Source of the DNA: Paragordius varius | Lineage: Eukaryota; Animalia; Nematomorpha | Reading direction: 5' to 3' | Length of the DNA: 64,000 nucleotides | Assembly: GCA_964247055.1 (NCBI GenBank) | Contig: OZ176051.1 | Location: 6,386,001 to 6,450,000, forward strand | Shown here: positions 29,601-57,150 of the stretch, one piece after another | Numbering within the stretch: position 1 is the first letter of the stretch | Layout: the number at the start of each line of letters is the position of its first letter | Made by a program: the position numbers and the translations under genes | Notes under the pieces: model-generated | The model's database searches: none | The model's input: only the letters and a program-made list of their open reading frames with translations | What the model was told of the DNA's origin: nothing

Positions 29601-30570
29601 TAAAACTTATGTTTGTTATAAATATGTAAAATATTAAAAAACTTTAATATAAGAAAATATATTGTTTATAGATCAAAATAAAGTATCTTGAAAAAATATT
29701 GAATAATTATTATAAAATACAGATAGGTTATAGGCAAATTAAATGTTTGAAAATCAATTTGCAAAATATTTATAATAAAATAAAAAGTATAAATTAAAGT
29801 TAAATATAACTATTCATTAACTAATTAAACGTAAATTGTAAAAGTCTTTATATAAAAATTGTTGCTTTTACTTGAGAATATTGTTATTTTTGCTTGAAAA
29901 ATGTTGCGTTTGGATAAAAAAAATGTGCTTGAAAAAATGTTATTTATTGAAATATGGTAATACTTTATGGTCATCAGGCCATTACATTGCATAAAAAACT
30001 TAAAAAATAAAAATAATTTGTTAACTTAATATTAATTTAAATCCAATTAAATAGGTCTTTAATTTTATATTGTTTATTTTATTTTTGATCATTATCTGAT
30101 CCAGGTTTAAAAAATATTATGTGGCTACAATAAAACTCATATGTTGATGCTATAGTTGAGTTTATTCGTAAACATTTGTTGAATTATTTGAAATTTATAA
30201 ATTATGCAAAGTAAAATATATACCAAATTTTCTTTGATCAGTTGCTGAAGTTTAAACATCATTCCTTGCCTTTGTACAATAGTTGTATTTGACCATTTGT
30301 CAAAAGCAGATTTAGCACTAAGAACAGCATTTTTCATTTCTTCATCTGTAGATATAGGAACTTTTGTCAAAACTTTGTTTGTAGCCTAAAATTTATCAAA
30401 ATAATTTTCTACTGGATTATGGATGTCAATCCAATCATTTGATTCCGATGCTATAAATTGACCATTTATAAACAAGGGCACAGTCTTCGGATATACAGAA
30501 AATATACTTTTTGATGTTGCGAAAATGCAAATTTGTGGATATACCTGCTGATAACTAAGGTGGTTTTCAT
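23639..30570 (-). CDS. ALDH6A1: Methylmalonate-semialdehyde dehydrogenase (acylating), mitochondrial; 13 exons, about 524 aa
   Basis: Exons 30570-30508 (tentative), 30484-30413, 30385-30224, 29539-29461, 28498-28344, 27650-27503, 27026-26962, 26577-26461, 25959-25830, 25176-24992, 24554-24375, 23933-23835, 23758-23639; all phases match. Motifs: [40 protein letters not shown], catalytic [39 protein letters not shown]. Confidence 0.96.
25442..25559 (+). repeat. Perfect 59-bp direct tandem duplication in an ALDH6A1 intron
   Basis: 25442-25500 is identical to 25501-25559. Confidence 0.9.
28593..28795. mobile_element. Tc1/mariner-type MITE, 203 bp
   Basis: About 50-bp imperfect TIR (C/T)AGTCATGTATGTTTA(G/A)AATTGTCAAACAT, flanked by TA on both sides. 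Confidence 0.8.
29745..29962 (-). mobile_element. Degenerate single arm of the 21-bp CAACATTTTTT array family
   Basis: Carries AAATGTTTGAAAATCA and degraded GCTTGAAAAATGTTGCGTTTGG units, as at 32720-33110. Confidence 0.6.
30386..30412 (-). other. 27-nt GT-AG intron in ALDH6A1
   Basis: GTAGAAAATTATTTTGATAAATTTTAG separates IHNP from ATN and ends in an in-frame TAG. Confidence 0.88.
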
Positions 30571-31795: not shown

Positions 31796-31831
<36 letters not shown>

Positions 31832-31835
<4 letters not shown>

Positions 31836-33550
31836 CCATTTTTCATGCAAAAACATCATTTTTTCAACCAAATGCAACATTTTTTTAAGCAAACGCAACA
31901 TTTTTTCAAGCAAAGACAACATTTTTTCAAGCACACGCAACATTTTTTCAAGCAAATACAACAATTATTCAACCAAACGCAACATTTTTTTAACCAAAAA
32001 CAACATTTTTTCATCCAAACGCAACATTTTATCAACCAAAGACAACATTTTTTCAAGCAAAAACAACAATTTTTTAAAATAAAAAACCATTTTTTTATTT
32101 TAAGACCTATTGAAACGTAGAATTATGATTTTTATTGTTTTATCATCAATATATGTTGGCATACCATTTGCACTTCAAGAGTGTCCTTGAACACTTCAAG
32201 TTGGTCCTTGAACATTTAAAGTTTAACAATTCAAGTTGTTCCTTTGACTTTTTTGTTTTGTTTTTAACTTTTATCAAACAAATTGTACATTTAACTATTT
32301 TATCGTTTTTAACCTATTTTCTACTATTTAGCATAATTTTGAAATCAATATCTACTATTAATCATTCAGGAACCGTATATCTATATTAATTTTTTTATAA
32401 TATAAGAATTTAACACGAAATTCAAAAATATACAATTTACAATTTTTCATTTAAATCCATTAAAAGTTAATAATTTTTGTTAAATTTAAAAATCGTTAGA
32501 GACAAAAAAGTGGTTTTTAAATAAATTTTTTATTTTTATATGAATAAATATATTATAAATAAAGAAAATTAGGTTAAAAATAAATAAATAAATAAAAATT
32601 AAATCAAAATTTAAAAATTTTAAGGGCCAACTTGAAATGTTCAAGGACCAACTTGAAGTGTAGGACACTCTTTAATATGCAAATGGTATACAATAAATAA
32701 AATAATTAAATTAAGGGCAAAATTAAAATGTTTGAAAATCATTTTACCATTTATAATAAAAGAATAAATACCATAATTCAAAGCTAAAATTTAATTAATC
32801 ATTAACTTAAAATTAAATGAATAATTATAGAATTGTCATAATATAAAAAAATTGGTGCAAAAAAATTGAAATGTTGTCTTTGGTTGAAAAAATGTTGCGT
32901 TTGGATGAAAAAATGTTATCTTTGGTTGAAAAAATGTTGCGTTCGCATGAAAAATTGTTGTCTTTGCTTGAAAAAATGTTGCTTTGCTCGAAAAAATGTT
33001 GTCTTCGCTTGAAAAAAATGTTGCGTTTGCTTGAAAAAATGTTGAGTTTGGTTGAAAAAATGTTGCATTTGGTTGAAAAAATGAGGTTTTTGCATGAAAA
33101 ATGGTATACTTAAATAATGCAATTTTTGGGCTAAATTTAAATGTTTGAAAATCAATCATACCATCAAATATTGATGATACAAAAATAAACATAATTCTAG
33201 TCTAAAATTAATTTACATTAACTTTAAATTTATGTTTTAAGATAAAAAAAAGGGTTTTATTTTTTTTAAAAATTGTTGTTTTTGCTTGAAAAAATGTTGT
33301 CGTTGGTAAAAAAATGTTGTGTTTGGATAAAAAAATGTTGTCTTTGCTTGAAAAAAGGTTGCCTTTGCTTGAAAAAATGTTGCGTTTGCTTAAAAATTGT
33401 TGTCTTTTCTTGAAAAAATGTTGCGTTTGCTCGAAAAACTGTTGTCTTTGCTTGAAAAAATGTTGCGTTTGCTTGAAAAAATGTTGAGTTTGGTTGAAAA
33501 AATGTTGCATTTGGTTGAAAAAATGATGTTTTTGCATGAAAAATGGTATA
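31832..33550. mobile_element. Foldback/MITE cluster with 21-22-bp subterminal arrays (unit about TTCAAGCAAACGCAACATTTT)
   Basis: Left arm from 31832 starts TATACCATTTTTCATGCAAAAA; two inverted right arms end ATGAAAAATGGTATA at 33108 and 33550. About 10 or more units per arm. Confidence 0.8.
32161..32690. mobile_element. MITE of the TTCAAGTTGGTCCTTGAA 21-bp family, nested in the foldback
   Basis: Left end ATACCATTTGCACTTCAAGAGTGTCCTTGAA is identical to 45241 onward; inverted copy ends GCAAATGGTATA at 32690. Confidence 0.85.
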
Positions 33551-39600: not shown

Positions 39601-42600
39601 ATGCTAATTTTAATTTTACTTTCTTTTTTATTGGGCGTCACTTTTATTTTATTTATTGAATATTATGGCTTTATTAAATATTTTAGAACGAGACCAAGAT
39701 CTACGGCTACCTCCTATTATTCCACATATGAACATCCCCAAGTTTCAAAATATTTAATTACATAGATTACAAATGCTGATAATCCAGCGTTAAATGTTTT
39801 TAATTTTCTGTTTCAATTTTTATTTTTTGAATTAAGAGATTCTTTCAAAGTGAAACAGTATTTTTTTGATAAAAATTTAGATGGATTATAAATAAAGTAT
39901 ATGCCGAACTTACAGAACTTAAGGCTGCATCATTTTTCGATAAAATATTGGGTGACGTGAAGGTAACTGACATTAATCTTGGCTCATATTTTCCACTCAT
40001 AAAAGATTTGGTCGTGGAAAATCTGGTGTTCGACAATGAGGGAGAGTTTTTAGAAGTTTGAACCACTGTCATATTATTTTTCTTTTAGGAATTGGATATT
40101 AAATTTACATGTGATTACAATTTTAATTGTTCCAAAGACTGTAAAAAATCCATGAAAAACTACTTTTCTACAATCATAAATAACAAAGTGGAAATTGACT
40201 CTTCACAAGGCACAAACGCCGAGCCAGTGATTTATTCTGGTTTTAATGGTTTTTATATGGTTCTTAAAACTCAAATTCTTTTGGTTGGGAAGGCTCAAGC
40301 TTCAGTCGTCATCAATATATCTGAACTCGAAGGGCCAGTCAGATTGCGGTTTTCACGCATTCCCTACACGCATTGGTCATTTATGTTCTTGAAGGTTTCT
40401 TAACTTATTTTTAAGTTTTAAACCTTTCTTGTCAAAAAATGTCCGAATTATCAACTAAAAGTATCCAAAAATTTAGTTTTTAAGGATAATATTTAGCCTT
40501 GAATTTAATTTTAGATACTTACCATTGCTTTATGATTTTTATTGAGAAACATAAATTATATATAACTCATTAGGTAATTTTAGAAAAATAAGATTATTTC
40601 CATTTGTTTATGATCTTTAATAAATCCTCCTAAAAATAGAACATAGCATGGTGATCTTATTTTGTGCTTGTAATGTCTAATGTAATTTTTTATTATTTAA
40701 TTAACTTAAATTACATGATTATTTTTAAAAGTTAATCAAGCGAAGATGTTTAAACGGGCATTAAAATCAGGAAAGTTGTTTTAACCGTTTTTAAACCGTT
40801 TAAAAAGGTTCTCGGTTTAATAGTATATAATAAAAATATTATTATGATTTGTATATCTGTTTATATTTATTTTTCCTTTTTATTCTAAAATAAATGTTGA
40901 TGTAATTATGAATGAATCGGAATCACATTTGAAAATCTTTGTATATAAAACCTAACCAAATTTAACAAAAAATAATTGGAAACGAAAATATTTGCCAATT
41001 TTTTGATAAAAACTCTAGAGCGATCGGAAGCAAAAGGGGTAGAGATTTCATTATAAGTATTGATTCATAGCTTTATATTTCCTATATTCTGGGAAACATT
41101 ATATGAATTACAATATTTTTTATAGCTCTTCAAATCTGTATTTTCTAACTAAAACAGTAATGTTCATCTATAAAAAATGAATTATCCTAATGCATAAGCA
41201 TAAATGTTTTTGTTTTAAATAAATATTTCATTTTTATCGTCTATTGCATTTATTTTTTTGTATCGATTTCCTTTAATAGTCTTTCTATCAATGTTATATG
41301 ATGTGACGCTTGGCTATTAAAATTACATGATATGAGATTGTTTATAATTTGGAATAAATTTTTAGATTTAGAATATTAATACAAAAAAATAAATGTAAAT
41401 TTATTTCTTTATATTCATATATATATAGGAGCCGAAACTGTCTCTAAATGTGGATTGTATCGTTAAAAACAAAAAGGTGCCTCAAATAGCATCCCTTATA
41501 GCCTCACAAGTAATAAGTTTATCAAAATAAAAAAATAATATTTTGATCACTAGCTGTGACTTATAGACGTAGTCATTAATGCAAATTTAATATGTGACCG
41601 CGTAGTTAACATAGGGCGCGGCCTTAATTATGTGCAGATTTACAAATTGTTATTGACTAATATTTCTTCTATATAATCTCAAATAACCAAATAAGATTTA
41701 TTAAATATATATATGTTTTCTCCTTAGCTTAAATTGTTTCCATTCGTATTTGATATATAAACCTATATGTAGCTCCAACCATATGCTAATTTCAAAAAAA
41801 ATCTTAACTAAAACTTTTGCTTTTAAATGGTATACTCATACTATTATTGTTGGATTCATTTATTATAATCCGTAAAATGGTGCCAAGTCATGTTATCTTA
41901 ATTTTACAGAGTTTGGAGCCTTTTATAACGGCAGAAATTTTAAGACGCTCAACTAAAATACATTTATACTGGAAATATCTAAAATCACTGTTGATTTTAT
42001 TTAGTCTCAGAGGTGATATGCTTTAAAGATTTAGTTTTAAGGTTTTTCATTTTACGAATTCAAAAAAGTGGTCCGATTATAATCGGCGCATTAAATTTAT
42101 AAATATTTTCCACTTTTATGACGCCAACACGTTTTACGGAAAATGGTCTCATAGCCCACATTCTAAATCTGCATTGTGAAAATTTCATACAATTTTTAAA
42201 TATATGTTGAATTACTAATGATTTCATAAAACAAAGTTTTAGTATATGGCCTATTACCTTATAGACTCAACTTTTACACATAAGTGTAAAACCATTTTGT
42301 CCTGCTAAACAAACTTGTTTCAAAAATGAAGAAAAGTATGATCTCCTTAATAAGCATTTGTCTAAAACAAGGGTCTCCAGCTTTTGAGTCAAGGATGCGG
42401 TTCACGAAGCCATTTGTATTAGATTTGACATCTCTGGTCTAATTTTATATTTTTTATATTGACAGATACGAAAATCCATATCTAAACGTCACACATTCCC
42501 CCATTATAAGTTACGGGTTAAACCCTTTTTCCATAGCATGTTTGATGATTTACAAAACAACATTTATCAACAAACCAAGCATCAAAACGCAGAAAATCTA

Positions 42601-45600
42601 TCACAGTCACTTCAAATAAATAGTGCTCAGAATGGATCAATTGGTAAATTTTGATTGAAAGGGTTTTTATTAGAAAACCCTCATATAATGACTCTGATTC
42701 GGAATCACAGCTGTATTCCGTATCGAGACCCCTTTTTTTAAAGAGTATTTTAGTTAGATAACACTTTAATAATAATTAAATATGAACAGATTATTAGAAT
42801 CTAATAAAATAATTAGAAATATTATGTATTTCTGCATAATACATCAATTTATTATATTGCCACGATTGAGGGGAGGGGGGGGGTTAAAGCTATTGTATTT
42901 TAATTTAAATGTAATGAGCCGTGATGTAGGACGGACTCTTACACTGCGTGCTAGAGTTCGAACCCCAGAGCTACGCAATTTTTATCACTGTCACCCCTGG
43001 GCAGGCGAGTGTTAAAGCCTTGACATGTCCGGATACAATTTGAATCCTTAAGTTATTAATAAATAAGGAAAAAAGAGACTCTAAACTGTGTAATTATCTA
43101 AAGTTAAATGTAATAAATTTATTTTTTTGCAGCCAACGGTAAAAGTAATCTCTCAAATGCGCCAGAATTTAGTATAAATATTAATAACAATAATCTAAAT
43201 GTAACTAACACATCAATTAACGCAACAAACTCCAATATCAATTCAACATTGAATTCAACTCAACAAAATAGCAATAACACAAATTTTGTGGCCAACAAAA
43301 TTGGACATTTATTACTTAATGCCACATATGGACTTATTAAATTTAATGATAATATAAATTTGATACGAAGTACGTTTTTTATGACACCGCACATATCTGA
43401 ATCGAAAAATCAAAAACCTGAAAACCAAAATGAAGTATTTTTTTTGTAATTTTAATACGCAATAAAAACATTTTTATATAAAAGTATTTTAATGTTTTAT
43501 ACTCACCTATTTTGTTGCAGAATGAAAAAATGCCAACCTCACCAAAACTATTGGGACGCCTTAATATATCCGTTATGCAATTGTATCGCCTCTTACCAAA
43601 TTTGCCAGAAGATTCTGAAATTATATTAGCTCTTTCCATAGGTAATAATTTAGTCAAAATATCATTGTTAAGGTAAATTTTAATATAATTATTCTTTTAC
43701 ACTATTTAAAATCTTTATTGGGTTATTTTCAAAATATATATATGAAAAATGATATGTATTTATTGAATTACCAATATTTAGTATATGGAAATATTTTTTA
43801 TGCTTAACAAAGGAATGAGCCGATTTATTATTGATTAATGAAATATTTTATATATCCTTTTTTGTGATAATTTGATATTTAAGATAACAAATCGTTGAAA
43901 GATTTGAATGAAGAATCAATTGAAAAATATCGGAATTTATATTGGAAAGAATATGAAATTATGATTGATTTAAATGGTCAACCTCCTGGTATAACACTCA
44001 AAGAAGTATTATTTTATATAAACCATTAGAATATAAATGAATCTTTTTTTTCAAATTATTCAATTTTACATATTTTACGTCATAGGTATTTATACCACAA
44101 AAGGGAAAACGTTGTATAATCATACACAGTATTGCTCCAAACTCTCCGGCCTGTCGGTATCAGTTGCAAAAAGTAATTTTTATAAAAATTTGAAATATAT
44201 ATATATATATATATATATAACATATATATCATATTCTAAAATAAATTTTAATTTGGTAATTTTACTAGGGAGATATGATTTTAAACATAAATGGGATACA
44301 ACAAATGAGCGGACGTCAGGCCAACAATTTACTCAAACAATACAGGAAAACGATGATAAAACAAAATGATAAGTAACTTGAAATTTTATCAATTTCATAT
44401 TTCTAATTGTTTCTGTGGTTATATTCACAAATTTTTGTAGTGGACAATTATTATTATAAATTAAAATTTTTTTATTAGGTAATAATTTCAAGATTGCCAA
44501 TAACTCCTTTTAATATCCATAAAAGTTACACGGTTGATATATTTGCTGAATTGTGCGATTTTTTTGCCATCACCATCTGTTAAAAACTATACTATTATTT
44601 TTGCCATTTTTAATTTTTTTTAAGCTACAAAATATATATTAAAACTTTCTTGCTTTTTTCCATTTTTAATATATTTAAAACATGAAAATACTATATTTAA
44701 CCATTTATATATATAAGATATCCCATGATAATTTGGGAAAAATAATTTTGATTAGATTTCTTTTATGTTACAAATAAAGCGTTCCTGATATTTCAAATAT
44801 TATATTTCTTAATAGTCAAACTTTAGGTAATAATATAAAATTTAATATAATATCATTTTATTTTTGCGCACTAGCTATTAAGTTTTTTAGCAAAGAAAAT
44901 AACTATATAGATCTTTACTTTTTTAAAATAGATTAACTATCAAATTTCAACGGTTTGAAAAACCCATATGTATTGCAACTGAACAACCGCATATATCAGA
45001 AAATAAGTTTAAGGATATATTTAGCTATGATGAGGACAAAAACGCAATAGATATAAAAAATGAATCACCATTTGCAAAGCCCACAAGCATACACACTACT
45101 GAACAAAAAGAAATGTTGGTTTTTTTAATTAAAAATTTCAAATCAACAACCCCATCTCTTTTAGATACTTTATTTAATTATTTGTCTGTTAATTAATTAA
45201 ATTTTTCCTTATCAAAACGTATTCTAGTGTGTATTTAAATATACCATTTGCACTTCAAGAGTGTCCTTGAACACTTCAAGTTGGTCCTTGAACAATTCAA
45301 GTTGGTCCTTGAACAGTTTAAGTTGATCCTTGAACAATTCAAGTTGGTCCTTGAATTTGTAAGTTTGCCAACTCTAAACCATTTAAATTAAATATTTTTT
45401 TTATATTTTGTCAAATTTTAGGTTTATTTGCAATAGTACTTTTGATTTTCCTAATTTAATTTATATAGATTATGAACCTATTTAGTGTAATATAATCAGA
45501 AACATTTGAAACAACTATCATTTATTAAATTTTTTCATAAAATATATTTATTGTATATTATAGAATAATCACTAATATAAATATATGATTAATTATGAGC

Positions 45601-48600
45601 ATAAGGATTTCCTGATGCTGCATTTATTAGATTCTTAGTTAACAATTTTGTATATCCTATCACATCCGATTCTGTGACTTTAGAGGCTTCTAAAATCAAC
45701 TCGGACAGTGATGTCTCCACGTCCCTTGATAACATGTCACAAACATAATTTTTTATTTTAGAGAATGCATTTTCAATAAGATTGAGCATAAAGCTGTATG
45801 GAGATAGAAATGAAATTTTATAGGAATAATTGGCGGCAATATCATTTAATGAATTTTACTAAGAATTTTTGCGCTATCCAAAATAAAATAAATATCTTCT
45901 AAATTAGATGAGTTAAGATGTATACAGAGATTAAAAAAATTTGCAAAAATATTAGCATTAACATTTCCGACTCTATATGTGAGTACACTATTCCAGCCGA
46001 ACCTAGGGCTGCTATCAAAGTAACGATTCTTCCTTTAACGTTTGGCAACTTTGCAATCGCTCTGGCTCCCTTCTTAGATCTTCCATAGTTTCTTCTTAAA
46101 TGGTTATGGAATCCTGACTCATCGATGAACACTATTTTGGAATAGTCGCAGCCAAAGGTTTCATTAAACCAAAGGGCGTATTCTAATTAAACTTAGATGA
46201 TCGTTAACCTTATTAATTTCAATATGAGTTTGTTTCATTGTAATGCCAAGCTTTCTGATAACATTATTAATAGTTGTATTAGAAAGGCGGATATTTTTTT
46301 CTACTAGAAAACAATTTAGTGATTTTAGTGTTATGAGTGGATTTATGGTAATTTGGCCTTCAATAAGGGCAACAATACTATCATCAACCTTTTCATATCT
46401 TTTTCCTCTATGATTTGTGTTTTCATTTATATTTTGTTTGTATTTACTAATAATACGTTTGGCAGTAATATATTTAATTTCTAGAGATCGTGGCATATTT
46501 ATTATACTTTCACCCTCTATATTGTTTTTTATCTTGATCAGATAATTTACTTCCTAGAATCTAAAATCTAAAATAAAATAATACTCATTTTGGAATAAAT
46601 ATAAATATTAGTTAAACAGACGATTTTTTTAAAATACATGAAAACTAACGTCTGCTTAAATCAACTAATACGGTGTGTATTTCATGTCAGATATGCAAGT
46701 TAAATTTATCAAATAAATATAAAGGTAGTAAAAATCATTAAATGATATTGCCGCCAATTATTCCTATAAAATTTCATTTCTATCTCCATACAGCTTTATG
46801 CTAAATCCTATTGAAAATGCATTCTCTAAAATAAAAAATTATGTTTGTGACATGTTATCAAGGGACGTGGAGACATCACTGTGTTGATTTTAGAAGCCTC
46901 TAAAGCTATCACAGAATCGGATGTGATAGGATATACAAAATTGTTAACTAAGAATCTAATAAATGCAGCATCAGGAAATCCTTATGCTCATAATTAATCA
47001 TATATTTATATTTGTGATTATTCTATAATATACGATAAATATATTTTGTGAAAAAATTTAATAAATGATGGTCGTTTCAAATGTTTCTGATTATTTTACA
47101 CTAAATAGGTTCATAATTTATAAAAATTAAATTAGGATAATCAAAAGTACTATTGCAAATAACAATAATAACCTAAAATTTGATAAAATATATAAAAAAT
47201 ATTTAATTTAAACGGTTTAGAGTTTTTGGCATAGTTACGAATTCAAGGACCAACTTGAATTGTTCAAGGACCAACTTGAATTGTTCAAGAACCAACTTGA
47301 ACTGTTCAAAGACCAACTCGAACTCTTCAAGGACCAACTTGAATTGTTCAAGGACCAACTTGAAGTGTTAAAGGACACTATTGAAGTGCAAACGGTATAA
47401 CCCAGAAAATTTATATATGTTTTCATTTCATGTTAAAATCTTATAAATATCCAAAATTATTTTAATAAATTAATTAAGCTATACGTTTTCTCAAAGATTA
47501 AAAGTTGATATCGATTTAAAATTTATGTTAAATAATAGAAAATAGGTTAAAAACAATAAAATAGATGAATTATTTATGATTTGATTGATAAAAGTTAAAG
47601 ACAAAACTAAAAAGTCAAAGGAGCAACTTGACGTGTTCAAGGACCAATTTGAAGTGTTTAAGGACCAACTTGAAATGTTCAAGGACCATCGAGAACACTC
47701 TTGAAGTGTAAATGGTATACCTAATTGTTAAATCCCGAATGCCCTGTAATGCAATTATTTTTATGTTTATTTTAAATATATTTATATTTTTCGATATGAC
47801 TAATAGTTTCCAAAATATAATTTAAATTTTAAAAATTGAATGAATTTAATAAACAAGACGTAATATGGCACATAAAACAAATATTTTACAAACTTTGTTT
47901 TAGTAACTATACTTTTGTTTTCCATTTTTTTACATTTACAGGGATTTAGATATACTAATTGATGAATGCGAAGAAAAACTATTTATTAATTCTGAAAACA
48001 TTGACACCATATCGTATTCGGATGAAAGTGCTAAAATATCATGTGCCAATGAATTTTCGCAAAAGGTTAGCGTTTAGAATTAGAGTAGACCCTACTCATA
48101 TTAAGATTTGGGAAAAAATGCATGGCTTAAAATCCACATAATGTTGCCGTTTTGAAAGAATTTAAAAATATTTATTATTATTCCACACATATGATTCAAA
48201 AAATTTAAAAAAATTATTAAGTTTCACCTTTTCTTATTTTTTTGCTAATTCTTCAATAGTAATTTATATAAAACACGGAAAATCAATGATCATTACAATT
48301 TTTTGTCACTGTTAATTTTGTAATGATAAAGAGGGGGGGCGGTCATTTAAAGGAATATTGGCCAAAATTAAAGAATCTTTTATTTAACATATTACAGATA
48401 ATATCTGAGGATACAGATAGTTTATTCACAACCAGCGTAAACCCAAACGAATCTTGTCTATCCCATGTAAGAGTCATTTAAATTATTTATTTTCGAAAAA
48501 AATTTGGTTTGATTTTGTGTTTACACACCTTTTTTAGCGATCAATTTCTTGCGATAATTTGAGCGATTGTGTAAATAAGCGTACTTTATCATGTGAACCA

Positions 48601-51600
48601 CCAGTTAATCGCTCAAGCTATCTTTCCAAATCATTTTTACGACTCCCTTCTTTCAAGCGAACTGGAAAGAAATCTAGGATAAATGCTACCCATTTATCAC
48701 ACAATAGTAATTTATTTTGCAAATATAACTCGTTATAAAATATTAGTCTACCTGATAAGGACCCTTTCCTAATAAGGCTTATAAATATGAGCGTCCATAA
48801 AATAAAAAAATATGGTGATATGCTATTATTTAAAATAAGCAACTTTGGTTTCTTTTGACAACTTTTAATCAGAAAATATCTTAAAATGCATCATAATTTT
48901 CCACGGGCTAATTAGTTTAGGCGCTGTTTATAAATTTTTAAGCCATGAATAGGGTTATTGTTAGGGTGAAATTTTTTTCAATATTGATGTATCAAGATTC
49001 ATAATATAATTTATGTCGTCATAAGTTTTAGAAAACGTGGGTGAAACTACATCCCTCTCCTCAGCATACAGTTCATCGCATCTTACAACCTTTTCTAATT
49101 TATCTACTAAATCCAAGTTTAAACCTGATGAAGTATTATCTATACAAAAATTACCAACTAATATTAATACTACTAATGCTTATAAAAATTCTTTGAATGA
49201 AACAACTATTCAACCTACCGCCCTAAATAATGGTATGATGGGACCTTTACTAGATGATTCCTTCGATGAACTCTCGTGTTCCACATCATTTTACATTGGA
49301 GATTTGGATACTTCAAGGGATGATGATTTATTTTTTGAAAACGCTGCTAACCCTAGCAATAATGATAATTTTAATAATCAGGAATTTGAATGTCCCAATA
49401 AAGTTAATATAAATAAAGTGCCTTCATCAATGAATGATATGTTACTACTGCAATCAAATAATGAAGATATGACCTTGAATGAAAGTGATCACAACTCTGT
49501 GTTTGATAAAAATGCAACGTTGACCAAAAGTATAGTTTTATCTTGTTTAAATAGCGAAAAATGGTTTAATTTTACACGTATGCAACCGACTTATTCTTAA
49601 TTTGATGCAATAATATCGCTTTTTGAAATTTTTAAAATTTTTACAAACATGAGTTATTCAATTTTATATATATGCATGAATTGGCTAAAATTGAATTTAT
49701 ATGATTTTATTACTTAATTAACTTTTTATAATTTAGTCTTTTTAAATTTTAGGTTCTGTTTCAACTGGTTCGATTACACAATCTAAGATTCTCATTTTAT
49801 CTTAACATTGTAATATTTATAGATTCAGTTATTCAATTCCAAAATCTGAATTCTAACATGGTCTCACATAATGAGAAAAATCCTCAATCACTCACCCCTA
49901 AATTGTACCGCTGTAATACTGATCAAACTGATAACACAAATGCATTTGATTCTAAAAGTTGTCACATAATGGACAATAGTGAAGCGTCTAATTTTTTCGA
50001 CTCAAAGAATTCAAATCAAATTTTTCAATCCCAGAATAATCCCTGTAATACCAAGCATAAACGTGTATTTAGTTTACCAATTAATGTCTTATCATTCGAT
50101 GAAACTGATTCAAATACCGATCCCATACATACCACTGATAAGAAACTCATCATAAATGATAAAGATCAGTTCCGCAAAAATTGTAACATAGCTGCCGATA
50201 AGCTTGATGTTTTGACTCCTTTAAAACATAATGAATCTAGCACAAATTTTAGAAATTTAGTAGCATCTAACATACAAAACTCAAGCTCTATCGTAACACA
50301 TACCACGGTACTTTTACCAAAAAGAACGTCCAAAGAAAATTTGAAAAAGGTAAGTTTGTTTTGTTGAGTACAGGAGGTGTCCAACACGCTTTGTTCGTTA
50401 CGCAAAAATGTTCTAAAAATGTGTAAAAAATAGAAAATTGAATTTCAATTAAGAAATTTTGATCATTTTAAAGATTTTTCAACTAAATTGGGCTCAAAAT
50501 TTGAAAAAAACCCAACATTTTTAAAACAACCCGCGATGAGATTCTGTTGGACACCCATGGTAGAGTGCTTAACATTGAATATTAGTGTATATATTATTAT
50601 ATATTTTTTAAGGATAATACTAACGCTTTTAAAACCGATGTTGTGCCAAACGAAAAAACTTTTGCCAATATAACCACCAAAAAAACTGAAAATTATCCAC
50701 AATTTTTACGAGAATTAACTTCGTTTGGAGTATGCCAAAAGCCAAATAGATTTGCCAAGGTATGGACTGGTCTGAATTCGAATGCAACTTTGCTGCATCA
50801 ATCAAAACATTCTATTTTATCGGACCCTTATCCATATAATACGGTTTATTTAATTTTTATAGCGGAGATCCTTTTTATAATAATCTAAATTTATTAGCTG
50901 CAGCGTAAAAACTTATTAAAAAAATTACCATAAAAATTAACCTTAGTTTAAAATTAAAAAGTGCATGACAATCAAAACAATCAGTTTATAAGATCCGTCG
51001 ATTTAATCGAAGAAGGGGGGTTTATATGATTTATAAATATTTTATATGCAATAAAATTAATTAATAAATTTAGTACGATACTTACCTTTTTATTAACATT
51101 AATTAAATATTTTTATTGACCTATTATCTATCTGTTTTTTATTATCGAAATTGTAATTACAAAAATATTTGGTTTAGGAGATACGCATGCCAATGAATAA
51201 TTATTCTTTTTACATATTCGATGGAGATATTCAACAACAACCAAAAAACTCAACACACTGCAACAATGGAAAATTATACTTAAATTTAGCCGTGATTTGT
51301 AAAGTTTATCAAAATTCTCAACCACTGTTAAATACCACCAAAAAAGGTTTTTTTTCGTATTTTGTTACAAGAAATAGGCTTATTAGAATATTTTCGATAC
51401 GCCGTCAATACTCAATAGCATTTGAATAGATTGGTACAAAAATTTTCACATTAATATTAATGTGTATTTTTAATAAAAATCAACATTATTCGGTTTGGAA
51501 ATTTACTAAATAATAACTATTGATTTATTCTATTCTTATTGACAAAAGGATTTATTAAAAATCCGTGTAAACTCTTCAAATCAATCAATATTTATAATTG

Positions 51601-54600
51601 TTAGACTGTGTATTATACTCAACTTTAATATTATTCGCAATCTGGCTAATATTAAGGCACATCTACCCGCAACCCCCTTTGCACTCTTATAGTGGATTAT
51701 AAAATACATAACACTTTTTATCTGTTATGTCGACTATTCTCAAGCCTTTGATAACTTTATGCGATTTCTTAATATAATGACCCACATCACGATAAACTTT
51801 AATTATTTAAAATTTACTTATGTGAAGCCTCTTTAAAAATTTATATTGAATGGTTTTTATGAAAAAGATGTAAAATAGGGTAGTAATCTTCATCCCTTGC
51901 TTTTCAATAGATACACTGAGTATATTATTTGACAAATCATCTTACACAACAATTCTTTGGGGGCTTATCTAGCCTTCGTTTTGCAAAATTAAGTGCCCGT
52001 CAAAAATAAAATATGCATTATAAGATCTCATATGATCTCTTTTTTTGTATAAAAAAATGGGATACAATTAATATTAAGAGAACTATAATTATGAGACTAA
52101 CTGCATCGAATACAAAACACCCATATCTGGTTTCCAGGTCGTCCAAAAAATACAGTTTATAATATGATTGAGCCTTATCGACATTAAATAGCGTGTAACG
52201 CTTGCCAAAATTGACTTTTATCAGCGCAAAAAATCAATCCTTGACCATTATTATAAAAATGTGTAATCTACCAAGTCTTATACGGTTGTAGTTAGATCAT
52301 AAAAAATACATTGATGCCTTGCAATGATAGATTGCAAATTTTTTAACAAATGAACTTATAAAAATGAAAATAACAAACAAGCCTTCTTATAATAATAAAT
52401 AATAATAATATCAAATGACCTTATTTGATATTTTCGATAATAGTTAATTGGAAAAGAAAATATGGCAGACTACCGACGAAATATATTGATTATCAAATAA
52501 TTAAATTGAATAATTTATCTACAATAATGTTGGCTATTACAAACGACTTTAAGTTAATGTATAAAGGTTTGTAAAAGCTTGCAATGTTTGAAAAAATTAA
52601 TAAATTAACAACGCTAATTATCAGTTTTTTCTCAGGCTAAAATTAAATAATGCAAGATTAAATTTATTGGAATATTAGATATAATAATATTTCAATTTAT
52701 ATTTTTAGGTGCCACGCACAACAAACCAACTATCGTAAAAAATTCACCTCAACCAAACTATTTCATTATTGGTCAAGTATAAAATTATTTAGCAATATAT
52801 ATCTAATCATATTTTATATAAAATAATTTATATTATCCTTAGATAAGTCATGAATTTACCTCGGAATTGCTACAAGAATGTAATTTAACTGATAGGGATA
52901 TGACCTTTAAAAAATTACCCCTAGATTGTCCAAACGATCTTTGTGAAAACCTGGGGGCATTTCGTGCGCGGTATAAATGCACATTAATGCTGTTTAAAAT
53001 TTATTTCATATGAAGTTTTGTATTTTTATTTAAACAGAAATTCGAGATTTCAAAAGTCTGTGAGGACTCAACAACCACCCATATATGATGTGGAAAGATG
53101 TTTTGGTGATATACTCATATCATTTGCATTCCAAACTTCAACATATAATGGTATATTTAATAGTTGTTTTAAAAGTAGTAGAAAAAAGTTATTTAGTGAA
53201 ACTAGTTTTTACCCTAAAACACAATGAATTTGTTAGCTAAGAAATATTGAATAAAAATGACGTTATAGCTTAACATCATAGATTTTATTTTATGGAAAGT
53301 TTTAATTAATAATCGAATTAAATCTTTTTACTAATTTTATGTGTTTTCAATTTAGAAATATTAGGTAACAACATTGAACCTCAAAAACTATCTTCCATAC
53401 ACTTGTATAATGCACTTATTACAAAACCTTTAAAAGTTGAAAATAAAGAAGACCACATCAATAGCCCTAAAAATCCACAAGATGAGTTAATTATTCATCA
53501 AAGATTTACAAATGATTGGCTCTCATATTGTGAGACGTCTAAAGGCATTGATCAATCTAATAACCATTTTATTGCCTTACAAAAACATGAAAATCGATTT
53601 GGAATTGTTTCCATGCAGTGCAGTATTAAAGATACCGATGATCTAAACCCAAATACTATCTTTCCAGCATCGATTAAACCATGCATATATTTCAAGCATC
53701 GAGGTTTTATATATTTTTAAACATTACTTGAAAATAAAATTTTTAATGGGTAAGATCCTTATTATTTATGGATTATATATGTGTCATATTGTATATTTAA
53801 GAGTGTAAATACTATCGTATTTGTTGGATTTCTAAAATTACCGATTTAATTAACTATTAAGCCGCTGTTGGTTTATATATGATATATTTATCTACTTTTT
53901 TCATGAATAAATGCAATTGGATAATTTTACTTGTTTATTATTAAATAAATAACACATAGATATTTTCATATTCCCCTACACTTATTCAGTATTAAAGTGC
54001 ATTAATTTTACAAAAAACGATCAGTGCGCTGTAATCAATATTTACTATTTTTTAATAAAAGTTTTAATTTACAGACGAATGGGACGTATTACAAGATTCA
54101 GATGAACAACAGTTTAATGAATCGGGTTTAGCATTATCCGATACGAATATTGTTACAAATCACAACAAACCAAACAATGCTCTTAAAAACAAAGCCATAA
54201 TTGCTAGTGGAAAAAAACTGCTAAAATATGGGTTATCCTACCTCTATCCTGGATCGGTTCAAGGTCAATCACAACAACCTTTGATATCAAAATCTCGGTA
54301 CCATCGTCAAAAATCGCAAAGTTACACCAATATTAATGTAAGTTTTTTTCTAAAATTTTATTATATAATGTGTCATTTTCACGATTAAAATTAACTTTTT
54401 GTTTTTATCAATATGATCCAGTTCATAAATATTTGGTAATGTTTTGGTTTTTTTTTTAAAGTTACATATGCCATAATTGTACGCTTTAATAAGGCAAAAA
54501 GGCATAATTTTAATTTAATATTTATTTTGCGTAGGAAACCGAAATAAATGAAATTGATGATATCACTAACAATACTACCGATATTGAACTTGCAAATGAG

Positions 54601-55748
54601 GCACTTCTTATTGGTATTAATTTATGATATTTATCATATCATGGTTAGAAAAATTCTAAGGGATACATAACTTGGCAAATATTGTTTTTAAATATCAATA
54701 AATTATATATATGTACATAAAAAAAACTTTTTTAGTTTTAAATCCTATGTCTTTTTCTCATTATCTAATGTGCAAGTATCTATTATAAAAATTTCATGGA
54801 AATAAAAATATTAATAATGATTATAGAATCAGGATCTGAACTACAAAAACCACCACTAGTCCAACATAATTTTTGTCTCCAACAATTTCCCAAAGGCACA
54901 TTTTGCATGTTTTGTGATCGCAAAGTTTGATATATGCATAAACAAAATTATTAAGATTTAACGAATTAAAATTTTCAGAAAATATTTTGTAAATTTAGCT
55001 AAAATGTTTTATTTAAGATTTATATTAAGAGTGCAATCTTACAAATTATTGTTTTAAACGTGGATTAATACAGTAAAAATTGAAATAATACGGACAAAAC
55101 CTAAAAATATACAGACAAATATTTTTATCTAAAAGGCAAACTGCTTTTTAACACCTTTAAACTTATATAAGCTATTTAGTTACAATTATATGTTAGTCAT
55201 ATATATTTCTATTTCAGACTTTACCATTTAAAAATGATGAGTTATATTGAAATAAATTAAAATTTAAAAGTATAGTTCTCTCTTAAAAATATTTGTCTTT
55301 ATATATTTATGTTTTGTCAAAATAATGATTGAATTTTACAACATGTAAATATATATATATTTTGCATTTTTTCAAAAAATAATTGTCATTAGATTTGGCT
55401 CAAATCTGCATTTATTTGTAATGTTTGTGGTAAAATTTGTCATAAAAAATGTCTCCTCCGTTGCTCCAATGAAACTGTTTGCCCTCAACAACGGTATTGT
55501 ATTTCAGTAAATATAATTTACATTCTATACATGATTATTTTTTTAAAGAGTTTATTTTTTACAAAAATACATAGAAATCAACACATACCTCCCAGTCCAA
55601 AAACTAAAGTAATAACACTAATTTTATTAATATAATAAGTCATTTATATTAAACGACATTATTTTGTTGTTAGATTTTACCAGATAGGCCAGCTCCACCA
55701 AAGAATGCACAATTATCTAATGATAATACACCAATCAAGCTTCATTAA
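39601..55748 (+). CDS. PDZD8: PDZ domain-containing protein 8 (TM-SMP-PDZ-C2-like-C1), 29 exons, about 1677 aa
   Basis: Exons 39601-39741, 39766-39857, 39881-40055, 40089-40394, 41429-41509, 42466-42643, 43133-43434, 43521-43641, 43884-44005, 44086-44172, 44269-44372, 44932-45114, 47942-48065, 48398-48466, 48538-48706, 49032-49577, 49823-50349, 50613-50843, 51178-51346, 52709-52776, 52843-52970, 53038-53150, 53356-53703, 54075-54337, 54535-54613, 54827-54924, 55393-55493, 55575-55608, 55674-55748 total 5034 nt in frame. Motifs: N-terminal TM; FLFFELRD; GPVRLRFSRIPYTHWSF; KRHTFPHYKLRVKPFF; PDZ IAPNSPA...GDMILNING; CFGDILISF; C1 HNF..CMFCDRKIWLKSAFICNVCGKICHKKC. Some low-complexity middle exons and the 3' end are less certain. 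Confidence 0.9.
39742..39765 (+). other. 24-nt GT-AG intron (PDZD8 intron 1)
   Basis: GTTTCAAAATATTTAATTACATAG; ends in an in-frame TAG. Confidence 0.8.
39858..39880 (+). other. 23-nt GT-AG intron (PDZD8 intron 2)
   Basis: GTATTTTTTTGATAAAAATTTAG; removal gives ELRDSFKVKQWIINKV, colinear with the conserved ELRD....RRW..KK motif. Confidence 0.88.
40056..40088 (+). other. 33-nt GT-AG intron (PDZD8 intron 3)
   Basis: GTTTGA...TTTTCTTTTAG; in-frame TGA at its second codon. Confidence 0.88.
42916..43075 (+). mobile_element. Probable tRNA-derived SINE in a PDZD8 intron
   Basis: GC-rich island with A-box-like GCCGTGATGTAG, B-box GTTCGAACC (42956-42964) and an A-rich tail; no full cloverleaf. Confidence 0.45.
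45240..47399 (-). mobile_element. IS630/Tc1-superfamily element with very long inverted arms, in a PDZD8 intron
   Basis: Arms 45240-45861 and 46725-47399 are inverted copies. Termini are TATACCATTTGCAC and GTGCAAACGGTATA, with 5 versus 7 subterminal 21-bp units. Confidence 0.9.
45589..46496 (-). pseudogene. Frameshifted DDE transposase (IS630/Tc1-like)
   Basis: HTH-like N-terminus, then IVFIDESGF (D1), YFILDSAKI (D2) and FLSPYSFMLNLIENAFSKIK (E), broken by at least 3 frameshifts. Confidence 0.9.
47490..47719 (-). mobile_element. Extra terminus of the same family (arm type seen at 32161-32360)
   Basis: About 4 21-bp units ending GTGTAAATGGTATA; the interior matches the reverse of about 32230-32360. 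Confidence 0.8.
50371..50549. mobile_element. hAT-type MITE related to 18347 and 59528
   Basis: Ends CAGGAGGTGTCCAACAC and TGTTGGACACCCATG; flanks GTTGAGTA and GTAGAGTG (6/8 match). Confidence 0.7.
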
Positions 55749-55759
55749 AGGTAATTGGT

Positions 55760-57150
55760 TACAAATTATAAAAAAAATGTGTGTGTATCGTCTTTGTGTA
55801 ATGGGTTATTGTATCTATATAACTGTAATATTTGCGATCATGCCAGGCGTTACCATCAATATGTTGAACACTCAAATAATTATTTATTGTTTTTTCCCAG
55901 TTAAAAGTTGGTCTACCCCTATGTGGAGATAAATTTTTATTTGTCCATTGCTCTGGAGCACGTTTGATGGGTCCGAAATGTCTAAGCCTATTTATTCTGA
56001 GCATAATATTTAAGAATTCGATTTGGTATAGTTGATAATTTGATTTGTTGTGTACCCACTTACAAGATGTACATAGGATTGAATTAAGTATTACATCTAA
56101 CTCACATACTCCATGGAAACTTAGGTCGTTCATCCCGTTATCAGCACCTTTGTTTTGCTTATATTTATCTTCATTCCACCCTTTTCTAAGTGTGATTTCC
56201 ATGTGTTGTACTTTTAATTTAATTCTTCCATTGATGTTGCGGTGAGGACGATGTCGTCCGCATGGATAAGTTTCCATGGTGGGCCTTGTTTTATATCTTT
56301 TGTTAAATAATCCATTATTAAAATGAAGAGTAGAGGGCTTAGGATGGAGCCTTGATGAAGACCAAATTCGTTTGGGACAAAAGCTGTGTTGCCTAGTGTT
56401 AATCTGACGCAGTTTGTTGTTTTTAGCACATCATTTCTCTTGATTTAATTATCCAATCATCTAAGTTGTTGGCTCGTAGTATGGATGTGATTAACTTCCT
56501 GGGGATACAATCAAAGGCCCTTTGTAGTCAATAAAAACATGATAAAGTTTTTTATTTTTCGCTAAATATTCTTGTAAGTTTCTCAAAATGAAGATAGTAT
56601 CAATTGTGCTGATATGTTTTGGAATCTTTGGTGAAAGTCTAGAGATGCGCTGTATTCTATATGTATCACCTTCTTTGTTATGGATGCCAAAAGCGTTCCA
56701 TGTATTCTCATATAGTCTTGGTCATTAGTGCAAACGTGGGAATTAAAATCTCCACCTATAAAAATTTTGTTAATGAGAAATGTCGTATATTTGGTCCAAA
56801 AGGCTTGTTTGGTTGCTTCGCTTAATTCAGACTGGGGGCATATATGGTAAGTATGTTTAGAGTTTTTTTAAAGATATGTATTTTCCGTTGTGTCTGTTTA
56901 TTTCTATTATATTTTCACAATATTTATTCTTAATAGCTATTAGCACTCAATGTTGGCCTTTTATTTGACCTTTGTAGAATATTATATAGTTGTCAATATT
57001 TAGCTTTTCTTCAAATTTATATCTTGTTTCCTGGAGGCAACAGATGTCACATTTTTCTCTTTGATTTGGTCGATAACTAAGTTTGATCTACTGATTAGTG
57101 TCGGAATATTCCAAGTGCCAATCTTCAGTCATTTTATCATATTGTTGGGT
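55760..57150 (-). mobile_element. Decayed, internally deleted RTE-like LINE (endonuclease and reverse transcriptase remnants)
   Basis: KIGTWNIPTL (APE start) near 57130; VFIDYKRAFDCIPR near 56510-56545; GLHQGSILSPLLFILIMD and LIHADDIV in ORF 56214-56429. Confidence 0.85.

What the first reader, a model, noticed from the sequence alone, without database searches (positions are those of the whole stretch)
39742..40088. Three consecutive ultra-short introns (24, 23, 33 nt) open the PDZD8 gene
Seen: the TM and SMP coding sequence is continuous only if GT-AG segments of 24, 23 and 33 nt are removed, and removing the 23-nt one restores the ELRD....xxW..K spacing of PDZD8. Known: animal introns are rarely under about 30-40 nt, and 20-30-nt introns are typical of ciliates, nucleomorphs, microsporidia and dicyemids, which have compact genomes. 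Inference: this TE-rich animal genome with kb-sized introns in the same gene also splices a minimal intron class, which suggests an unusually compact spliceosome geometry.
Basis: partly seen in the sequence, partly recalled or inferred. Interest (0 to 1): 0.82.

Follow-up and report, generated by a model that had tools for sequence, protein, structure and literature searches.

The report
Tiny 5' introns in hairworm PDZD8
The first three introns of an ordinary lipid-transfer gene (PDZD8) in a repeat-rich horsehair-worm genome are only 24, 23 and 33 bases long and sit exactly where a related hairworm has introns of 40 to 18,617 bases, which points to a third animal lineage with introns under 30 bases, although no RNA was available to show the cutting at these three sites.

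Summary
Confirmed at DNA level. The closest relative, the hairworm Gordionus, has introns at the same codon and phase at all three sites (40, 18,617, 3,282 nt); the bed bug shares site 1. A spliced alignment free to use any intron of 12 nt or more picks exactly these three; forbidding introns under 34 nt deletes the conserved ELRD block. A second haplotype has a 1-nt deletion in intron 2 (22 nt) and two stops in intron 1, while 12 of 14 listed exon changes are silent: a live gene, not a pseudogene or assembly collapse. Later introns are 66-1,291 nt; ALDH6A1 in this window repeats the 5' pattern. No RNA covers this locus. A 2026 survey knows sub-30-nt animal introns only in myxobolids and Dicyema (PMC13644364). 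The 'altered spliceosome' inference is untested and not required. The scan has already noted this intron class many times on other DNA of this genome; this is one more well-supported locus.

The parts
39601..39741 (+). PDZD8 coding exon 1 (ATG, N-terminal transmembrane helix), 47 codons, ends PQ
   Evidence: aligns to Gordionus residues 1-49 and to Cimex
39742..39765 (+). intron 1, 24 nt, phase 0, GT..TAG, in-frame stop at its end
   Evidence: same codon and phase as a 40-nt intron in Gordionus and a 3,464-nt intron in Cimex; second haplotype carries two changes giving two in-frame stops; bridged without gaps by an X3 contig (record 9)
39766..39857 (+). exon 2 (92 nt), start of the SMP region with the ELRD block
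   Evidence: aligns to Gordionus 58-86; linker 7 residues shorter than Gordionus, 4 shorter than Cimex
39858..39880 (+). intron 2, 23 nt (22 nt in the second haplotype), phase 2, GT..TAG
   Evidence: same codon and phase as an 18,617-nt intron in Gordionus, same four bases after the acceptor; 1-nt deletion at 39861 in the other haplotype; absent in Cimex
39881..40055 (+). exon 3 (175 nt), SMP domain
   Evidence: gap-free alignment to Gordionus 88-145, Sycon 92-149 and Cimex 91-148; weak MMM1 Pfam hit E 0.012
40056..40088 (+). intron 3, 33 nt, phase 0, GT..TAG with a short pyrimidine tract and in-frame TGA
   Evidence: same codon and phase as a 3,282-nt intron in Gordionus; absent in Cimex
40089..40394 (+). 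exon 4 (306 nt), SMP domain
   Evidence: best hit among 1.84 billion proteins is Gordionus PDZD8, E 1.2e-11
40395..41428 (+). intron 4, 1,034 nt, phase 0: first ordinary-sized intron
   Evidence: position shared with Gordionus and the sponge Sycon
41429..55482 (+). rest of PDZD8 as far as it could be aligned (SMP end, C2, PDZ, C1); position-anchored introns 66-956 nt
   Evidence: tblastn and local spliced alignment against the Gordionus protein; the middle part is poorly conserved and its boundaries are not reliable
30386..30412 (-). independent 27-nt GT..TAG intron near the start of ALDH6A1, in-frame stop at its end
   Evidence: three-frame translation; later ALDH6A1 introns are about 384-962 nt
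30485..30507 (-). probable 23-nt first intron of ALDH6A1 (a 38-nt alternative, 30507-30544, also keeps the frame)
   Evidence: frame switch; not resolved by homology here

Best explanation
These are genuine, inherited U2-type (GT-AG) spliceosomal introns of a functional PDZD8 gene in a horsehair worm (Nematomorpha) that have been shortened by deletion to 22-33 nt. Shown: position and phase are shared with long introns of relatives, the gene is under purifying selection in the spliced frames, and the intron interiors tolerate substitutions and a 1-nt indel. Inferred: they are recognised across the intron (intron definition) by an ordinary major spliceosome using GT, a branch A about 9-12 nt before the end (A-rich patch at -9/-10 in introns 1 and 2) and the terminal TAG with almost no pyrimidine tract, giving a lariat loop of about 12-15 nt. 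Inferred, weaker: the tiny class is confined to the first few hundred bases of genes, whereas later introns stay at 66 nt or more; retained copies would be destroyed by nonsense-mediated decay because each holds a stop or shifts the frame.
For: boundaries, stops; Gordionus introns at the same three codons and phases: 40, 18,617, 3,282 nt; Cimex intron of 3,464 nt at site 1; unconstrained spliced alignment picks exactly these three with two different templates; score 412 falls to 337 at minimum 25 nt and 275 at minimum 34 nt; 12 of 14 listed exon differences silent, expected 21-30%, P about 1e-5; 22-nt allele of intron 2; two stops in the other allele of intron 1; 17 later introns of three genes are 66-1,291 nt; first 3 of 12 anchored PDZD8 introns are the short ones, P 1/220; Shaw gene of the window is 84-90% identical to Gordionus against at most 67-81% to others.
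Against: No RNA read or contig covers these junctions, so excision, efficiency and exact sites are not observed. The acceptor of intron 1 lies in a variable linker and is fixed by frame, not by homology. Only 40 of 115 haplotype differences were printed. Branch points are guessed from 83-87% A+T sequence. Introns 2 and 3 were found in one outside species only.
Confidence: 0.92

Rival explanations
1. The gene is spliced with longer introns at other sites, or the protein starts downstream, so the tiny segments are never excised as such.
For: Other GT/GC and AG pairs that keep an open frame exist (e.g. 60, 71 and 63 nt). No RNA evidence here.
Against: Those solutions delete the ELRD block and parts of exons 1-3 and lose 137 score units; exons 1 and 2 carry mostly silent changes between haplotypes; donors coincide with those of Gordionus and Cimex.
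Confidence: 0.03
2. Assembly artefact: longer A+T-rich introns were collapsed, or small errors created the stops and the frameshift.
For: Low-complexity sequence; the best DNA run may be the assembly's own source, and run X3 shares its alleles, so it may not be independent.
Against: Short-read contigs of two runs cross the segments with no extra letters: X3 record 9 spans 39625-39841 with 0 gaps, records 10 and 11 cover 39862-40306 with 0 gaps, and both haplotypes of X1 cover intron 1; no joint or insertion is listed at these sites (tables are truncated). A second haplotype differs inside the introns yet is equally short.
Confidence: 0.02
3. Pseudogene or processed remnant: a dead PDZD8 copy whose introns decayed by deletion and are no longer spliced.
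For: No expression shown; one ancestral intron (Gordionus residue 114, also in Cimex) is missing here.
Against: 12 of 14 exon differences silent; all six splice dinucleotides are intact and none is among the listed haplotype differences; the gene continues in frame with conserved intron sites to the C1 domain.
Confidence: 0.02
4. The segments are removed, but by something other than the ordinary major spliceosome (a specialised, cap-linked or variant-U1 spliceosome, or a non-spliceosomal cut).
For: Strong 5' clustering and a size gap (33 versus 66 nt or more) in this window; donors lack the usual +5 G (4 of 22 introns); unchecked scan notes mention a variant U1.
Against: Ends are plain GT..AG and look like those of the long introns, which also lack +5 G; positions are inherited from ordinary introns; other tiny-intron lineages use canonical snRNAs. 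As to machinery this is a sub-case of the best explanation and is untested.
Confidence: 0.1

Closest known systems
Ultra-short introns of myxobolid myxozoans and Dicyema japonicum (PMC13644364)
   Same: GT-AG introns of 22-27 nt at conserved positions; reduced donor and acceptor signals; A-rich patch before the AG; short introns neighbour other short introns; parasitic animal.
   Different: There the short class sets the genome-wide median in compact genomes; here it is a minority at gene starts, beside introns of 66 to over 1,000 nt in a transposon-rich region, in an ecdysozoan phylum not named in that paper's main text (its species list could not be read).
Ciliate tiny introns (Stentor 15-16 nt, PMC9505925; Paramecium about 25 nt, PMC5014332 abstract)
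   Same: Size range, GT..AG ends, U/A-rich interior; shows such lengths fit a spliceosome with conserved snRNA sites.
   Different: Ciliates have only tiny introns; Stentor lacks SR proteins. This genome must handle both 22-nt and kilobase introns in one transcript.
PDZD8 (SMP-C2-PDZ-C1 lipid-transfer tether) of Gordionus sp. m RMFG-2023, XP_065321733.1 / CAK9292867.1
   Same: Orthologous protein; introns at the same three codons and at most later anchored sites.
   Different: Its three introns are 40, 18,617 and 3,282 nt; it keeps an extra intron at residue 114 that this gene has lost.

Membership tests
U2-type spliceosomal intron | GT..AG ends, no U12 donor consensus | tested here: met
U2-type spliceosomal intron | removal restores a conserved open frame; retention breaks it | tested here: met
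U2-type spliceosomal intron | position and phase shared with annotated introns of orthologues | tested here: met
   3 of 3 in Gordionus; 1 of 3 in Cimex; 5' part of Sycon gene not available
U2-type spliceosomal intron | interior evolves as non-coding sequence | tested here: met
   1-nt indel allele in intron 2, stop-creating changes in intron 1; few events
U2-type spliceosomal intron | absent from mature mRNA | tested here: inconclusive
   no RNA run covers the locus
U2-type spliceosomal intron | branch-point adenosine and lariat | not testable with these tools
   A at -9 and -10 in introns 1 and 2, at -13 and -16 in intron 3, but A+T content makes this weak
Animal ultra-short intron class (<30 nt, PMC13644364) | length under 30 nt | tested here: met
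   introns 1 and 2 (24; 23/22 nt) and ALDH6A1 27 nt; intron 3 (33 nt) is just above
Animal ultra-short intron class (<30 nt, PMC13644364) | short class dominates the genome-wide length distribution of a compact genome | tested here: not met
   within this window 5 of 22 scored introns are 33 nt or less, 17 are 66-1,291 nt; window only, not genome-wide
PDZD8 | N-terminal TM helix, SMP, C2, PDZ and C1 in order, best hits named PDZD8 | tested here: met
Nematomorpha (source organism) | closest protein matches are hairworm | tested here: met
   PDZD8 exon 4 and both Shaw exons match Gordionus best by a wide margin; no tree built, species not identified

The most novel reading that the evidence does not exclude
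A third animal lineage with sub-30-nt spliceosomal introns, and the first in which they are not a by-product of genome compaction but a position-dependent class: the first introns of genes are driven to a 22-33-nt floor while later introns of the same transcripts stay long, implying that cap- or promoter-proximal introns are recognised by a distinct route (or by a remodelled U1/U2AF set) in hairworms.
Probability: 0.35. Interest if true: 0.88.

Novelty: new variant of a known kind. Interest (0 to 1): 0.72.

Why it matters
The lower limit of animal intron length was put at about 30 nt until a 2026 survey showed two exceptions, both tiny parasites with compact genomes. A hairworm that splices 22-24-nt and kilobase introns in one pre-mRNA uncouples minimal introns from genome compaction and gives a built-in control (same gene, same cell, orthologous long introns in Gordionus) for asking what sets the minimum and whether position in the transcript matters. 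Practically, gene finders with a minimum intron length of 30-40 nt (my own knowledge, not tested) will truncate or frameshift the N-termini of such genes, which could inflate reported gene loss in this phylum.

Tried and rejected
Word search with exon 4 found nothing; Pfam and PDB left the exons almost unassigned, so the one large search was used; its hits P0002-P0006 match only a low-complexity stretch and were ignored. RNA: runs X4 and X6 (guessed RNA, same species label) gave no exon coverage at 80% likeness; X3, which I hoped was RNA because it held 21% of words, is DNA (it covers intron sequence, no spliced joints). Stop read-through of intron 1 (its 8 codons match an 8-residue gap against Gordionus) was considered and rejected: the other haplotype has two stops there, the donor is shared with Gordionus and Cimex, and the linker length varies (30, 34, 37 residues). 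Sycon 5' exons were not on the fetched contigs; the Lycorma gene was too long to fetch. Literature searches for hairworm intron lengths found nothing; two hairworm genome preprints do not contain the word intron. Joined translation and spliced alignment were done only locally in scripts on stored files.

Full report
Observation. The window is A+T-rich (24-34% G+C in most bins). From the ATG at 39601 the + strand encodes a hydrophobic N-terminus and SMP-like blocks in changing frames. Three segments, 39742-39765 (24 nt), 39858-39880 (23 nt) and 40056-40088 (33 nt), begin GT and end TAG. Kept in, the first ends in an in-frame stop, the second shifts the frame, the third has an in-frame TGA. Removed, 39601-40394 is 238 codons without a stop. 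A short GT..AG is common by chance here (43% of GTs), so the case rests on the tests below.

Gene and organism. Exon 4, searched alone against 1.84 billion proteins, finds two real relatives: a protein of the hairworm Gordionus sp. m RMFG-2023 (E 1.2e-11) and PDZD8 of the sponge Sycon. The Gordionus gene carries PDZD8_N and C1 marks and its N-terminal part retrieves insect PDZD8. The window holds the whole gene to about 55.5 kb. The Shaw channel gene of the window is 90% and 84% identical to Gordionus in its two main exons, against at most 81% and 67% for other animals. The source is therefore most likely a horsehair worm other than Gordionus montsenyensis; the species was not identified.

Test 1, homologous intron positions. 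Mapping the two Gordionus protein models on their own DNA (L001) gives introns after ...ELPQ (phase 0, 40 nt), inside the codon before W in ...RIK-R-W (phase 2, 18,617 nt) and after ...HIE (phase 0, 3,282 nt). These are the same codons and phases as the three segments here; at site 2 even the four bases after the acceptor are identical. The bed bug Cimex has a 3,464-nt intron at site 1 (after ...ELPK) and none at sites 2 and 3, so site 1 predates the hairworm-insect split and sites 2-3 are at least as old as the split from Gordionus. Introns 4 and 5 are shared even with the sponge. The segments are thus shrunken old introns, not new insertions.

Test 2, alternatives. A spliced aligner allowed any GT/GC..AG intron of 12 nt or more chose exactly these three with either Gordionus or Sycon as template. 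With a minimum of 25 nt the Gordionus score fell from 412 to 337, and with 34 nt or more to 275, deleting the ELRD block. One caveat: exon 2 is 7 residues shorter than in Gordionus at its start, so the acceptor of intron 1 is fixed by frame (39765 is the only AG before intron 2 that keeps it), not by homology; the linker is 30, 34 and 37 residues in the window, Cimex and Gordionus.

Test 3, reads. No RNA run holds the locus; two guessed-RNA runs gave no exon coverage. DNA contigs are informative. Run X1 shows two haplotypes. The second has a 1-nt deletion at 39861, making intron 2 22 nt, and two changes at 39760-39761 that put two in-frame stops in intron 1. Of the 14 listed exon differences, 12 are silent in the spliced frames (expected 21-30%; P 4e-7 to 3e-5), and the six downstream of intron 2 would all change residues in the unspliced frame. 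Only the 40 best-supported of 115 differences were printed. Run X3 has gap-free contigs over 39625-39841, 39862-40089 and 40063-40306, so the segments are not collapsed longer introns; X3 shares X1's alleles at low depth and may not be an independent animal.

Context. The nine later PDZD8 introns whose sites match Gordionus are 66-1,034 nt; the chance that the three short ones come first among twelve is 1/220. ALDH6A1, transcribed the other way from 30570, starts with a probable 23-nt and a clear 27-nt intron followed by introns of about 384-962 nt. Shaw, whose first coding intron lies 537 nt after the ATG, has 1,291 and 770 nt. All five short introns start within 460 nt of an ATG, but ALDH6A1 has a 684-nt intron at +347, so there is no sharp distance rule. 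In Gordionus PDZD8 the first coding intron is also the shortest (40 nt; the others 126 nt or more), a single hint. Donors of short and long introns look alike and mostly lack +5 G (1 of 5 and 3 of 17).

Mechanism. Most likely (0.92) ordinary U2-type introns recognised across their short length, with GT, a branch A near -9 to -12 and TAG; the branch point is inferred, not shown. Each retained intron would carry a stop or a frameshift, so failures would be cleared by nonsense-mediated decay (established pathway, not tested). Why they sit at 5' ends is open: cap- or promoter-linked recognition, or stronger deletion and selection against insertions near promoters.

Comparison. A September 2026 survey of 51 animal genomes found introns under 30 nt only in myxobolid myxozoans and Dicyema, with canonical U2 and U2AF kept, and predicted more cases (PMC13644364); hairworms are not named in its main text, and its species list was not available. 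Stentor splices 15-16-nt introns with conserved snRNA sites (PMC9505925). I found no paper on hairworm intron length. So the kind is known; the lineage, the coexistence with kilobase introns and the 5' confinement appear unreported.

Earlier scan notes. The scan has recorded the same class on many other stretches of this genome, two notes claiming RNA support for other genes; I could not check those and did not count them as evidence. Searches were made exon by exon by reference; the joined model was not sent to any search tool.

Verdict. Real, well supported by comparison and polymorphism, not yet shown in RNA at these sites. New variant of a known kind; interest 0.72.

Noticed in passing
window:30386-30570 (-): ALDH6A1 starts with a probable 23-nt (or 38-nt) and a clear 27-nt intron; the gene is head-to-head with PDZD8 across about 9 kb of repeats.
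   Followed up: partly
window:39957-39965: An intron present in Gordionus (residue 114, 1,031 nt) and Cimex (59 nt) is absent here: precise intron loss between two ultra-short introns.
   Followed up: partly
L001:3001-3570 and P0008:1-136: The RefSeq model of Gordionus PDZD8 (XP_065321733.1) replaces the true start with two upstream exons that look like a MULE-type transposase remnant (judged by eye from motifs); probably a mis-annotation.
   Followed up: no
L001:10952-10991: The first coding intron of Gordionus PDZD8 is 40 nt, the shortest in that gene by far.
   Followed up: no
window:39600-42400: The two haplotypes in run X1 differ strongly (about 4% in exons; a 488-nt and a 227-nt segment replaced or missing in introns 4 and 5).
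   Followed up: partly
window:39410-39500: A very high-copy short repeat (depth hundreds of times the single-copy level) lies about 100-190 nt upstream of the PDZD8 ATG.
   Followed up: no
window:7377-7490 (-): Rfam K_chan_RES (potassium-channel RNA editing signal) match, 83 bits, in the Shaw gene; may only reflect conserved coding sequence.
   Followed up: no
window:6207-10703 (-): Shaw (Kv3) gene with two introns of 1,291 and 770 nt and a long glycine/asparagine-rich tail.
   Followed up: partly
window:45240-47720, 31830-33550, 55760-57100: Transposon remains: an element with inverted arms and 21-bp arrays inside a PDZD8 intron, related arrays upstream, and a decayed LINE-like fragment on the minus strand.
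   Followed up: no
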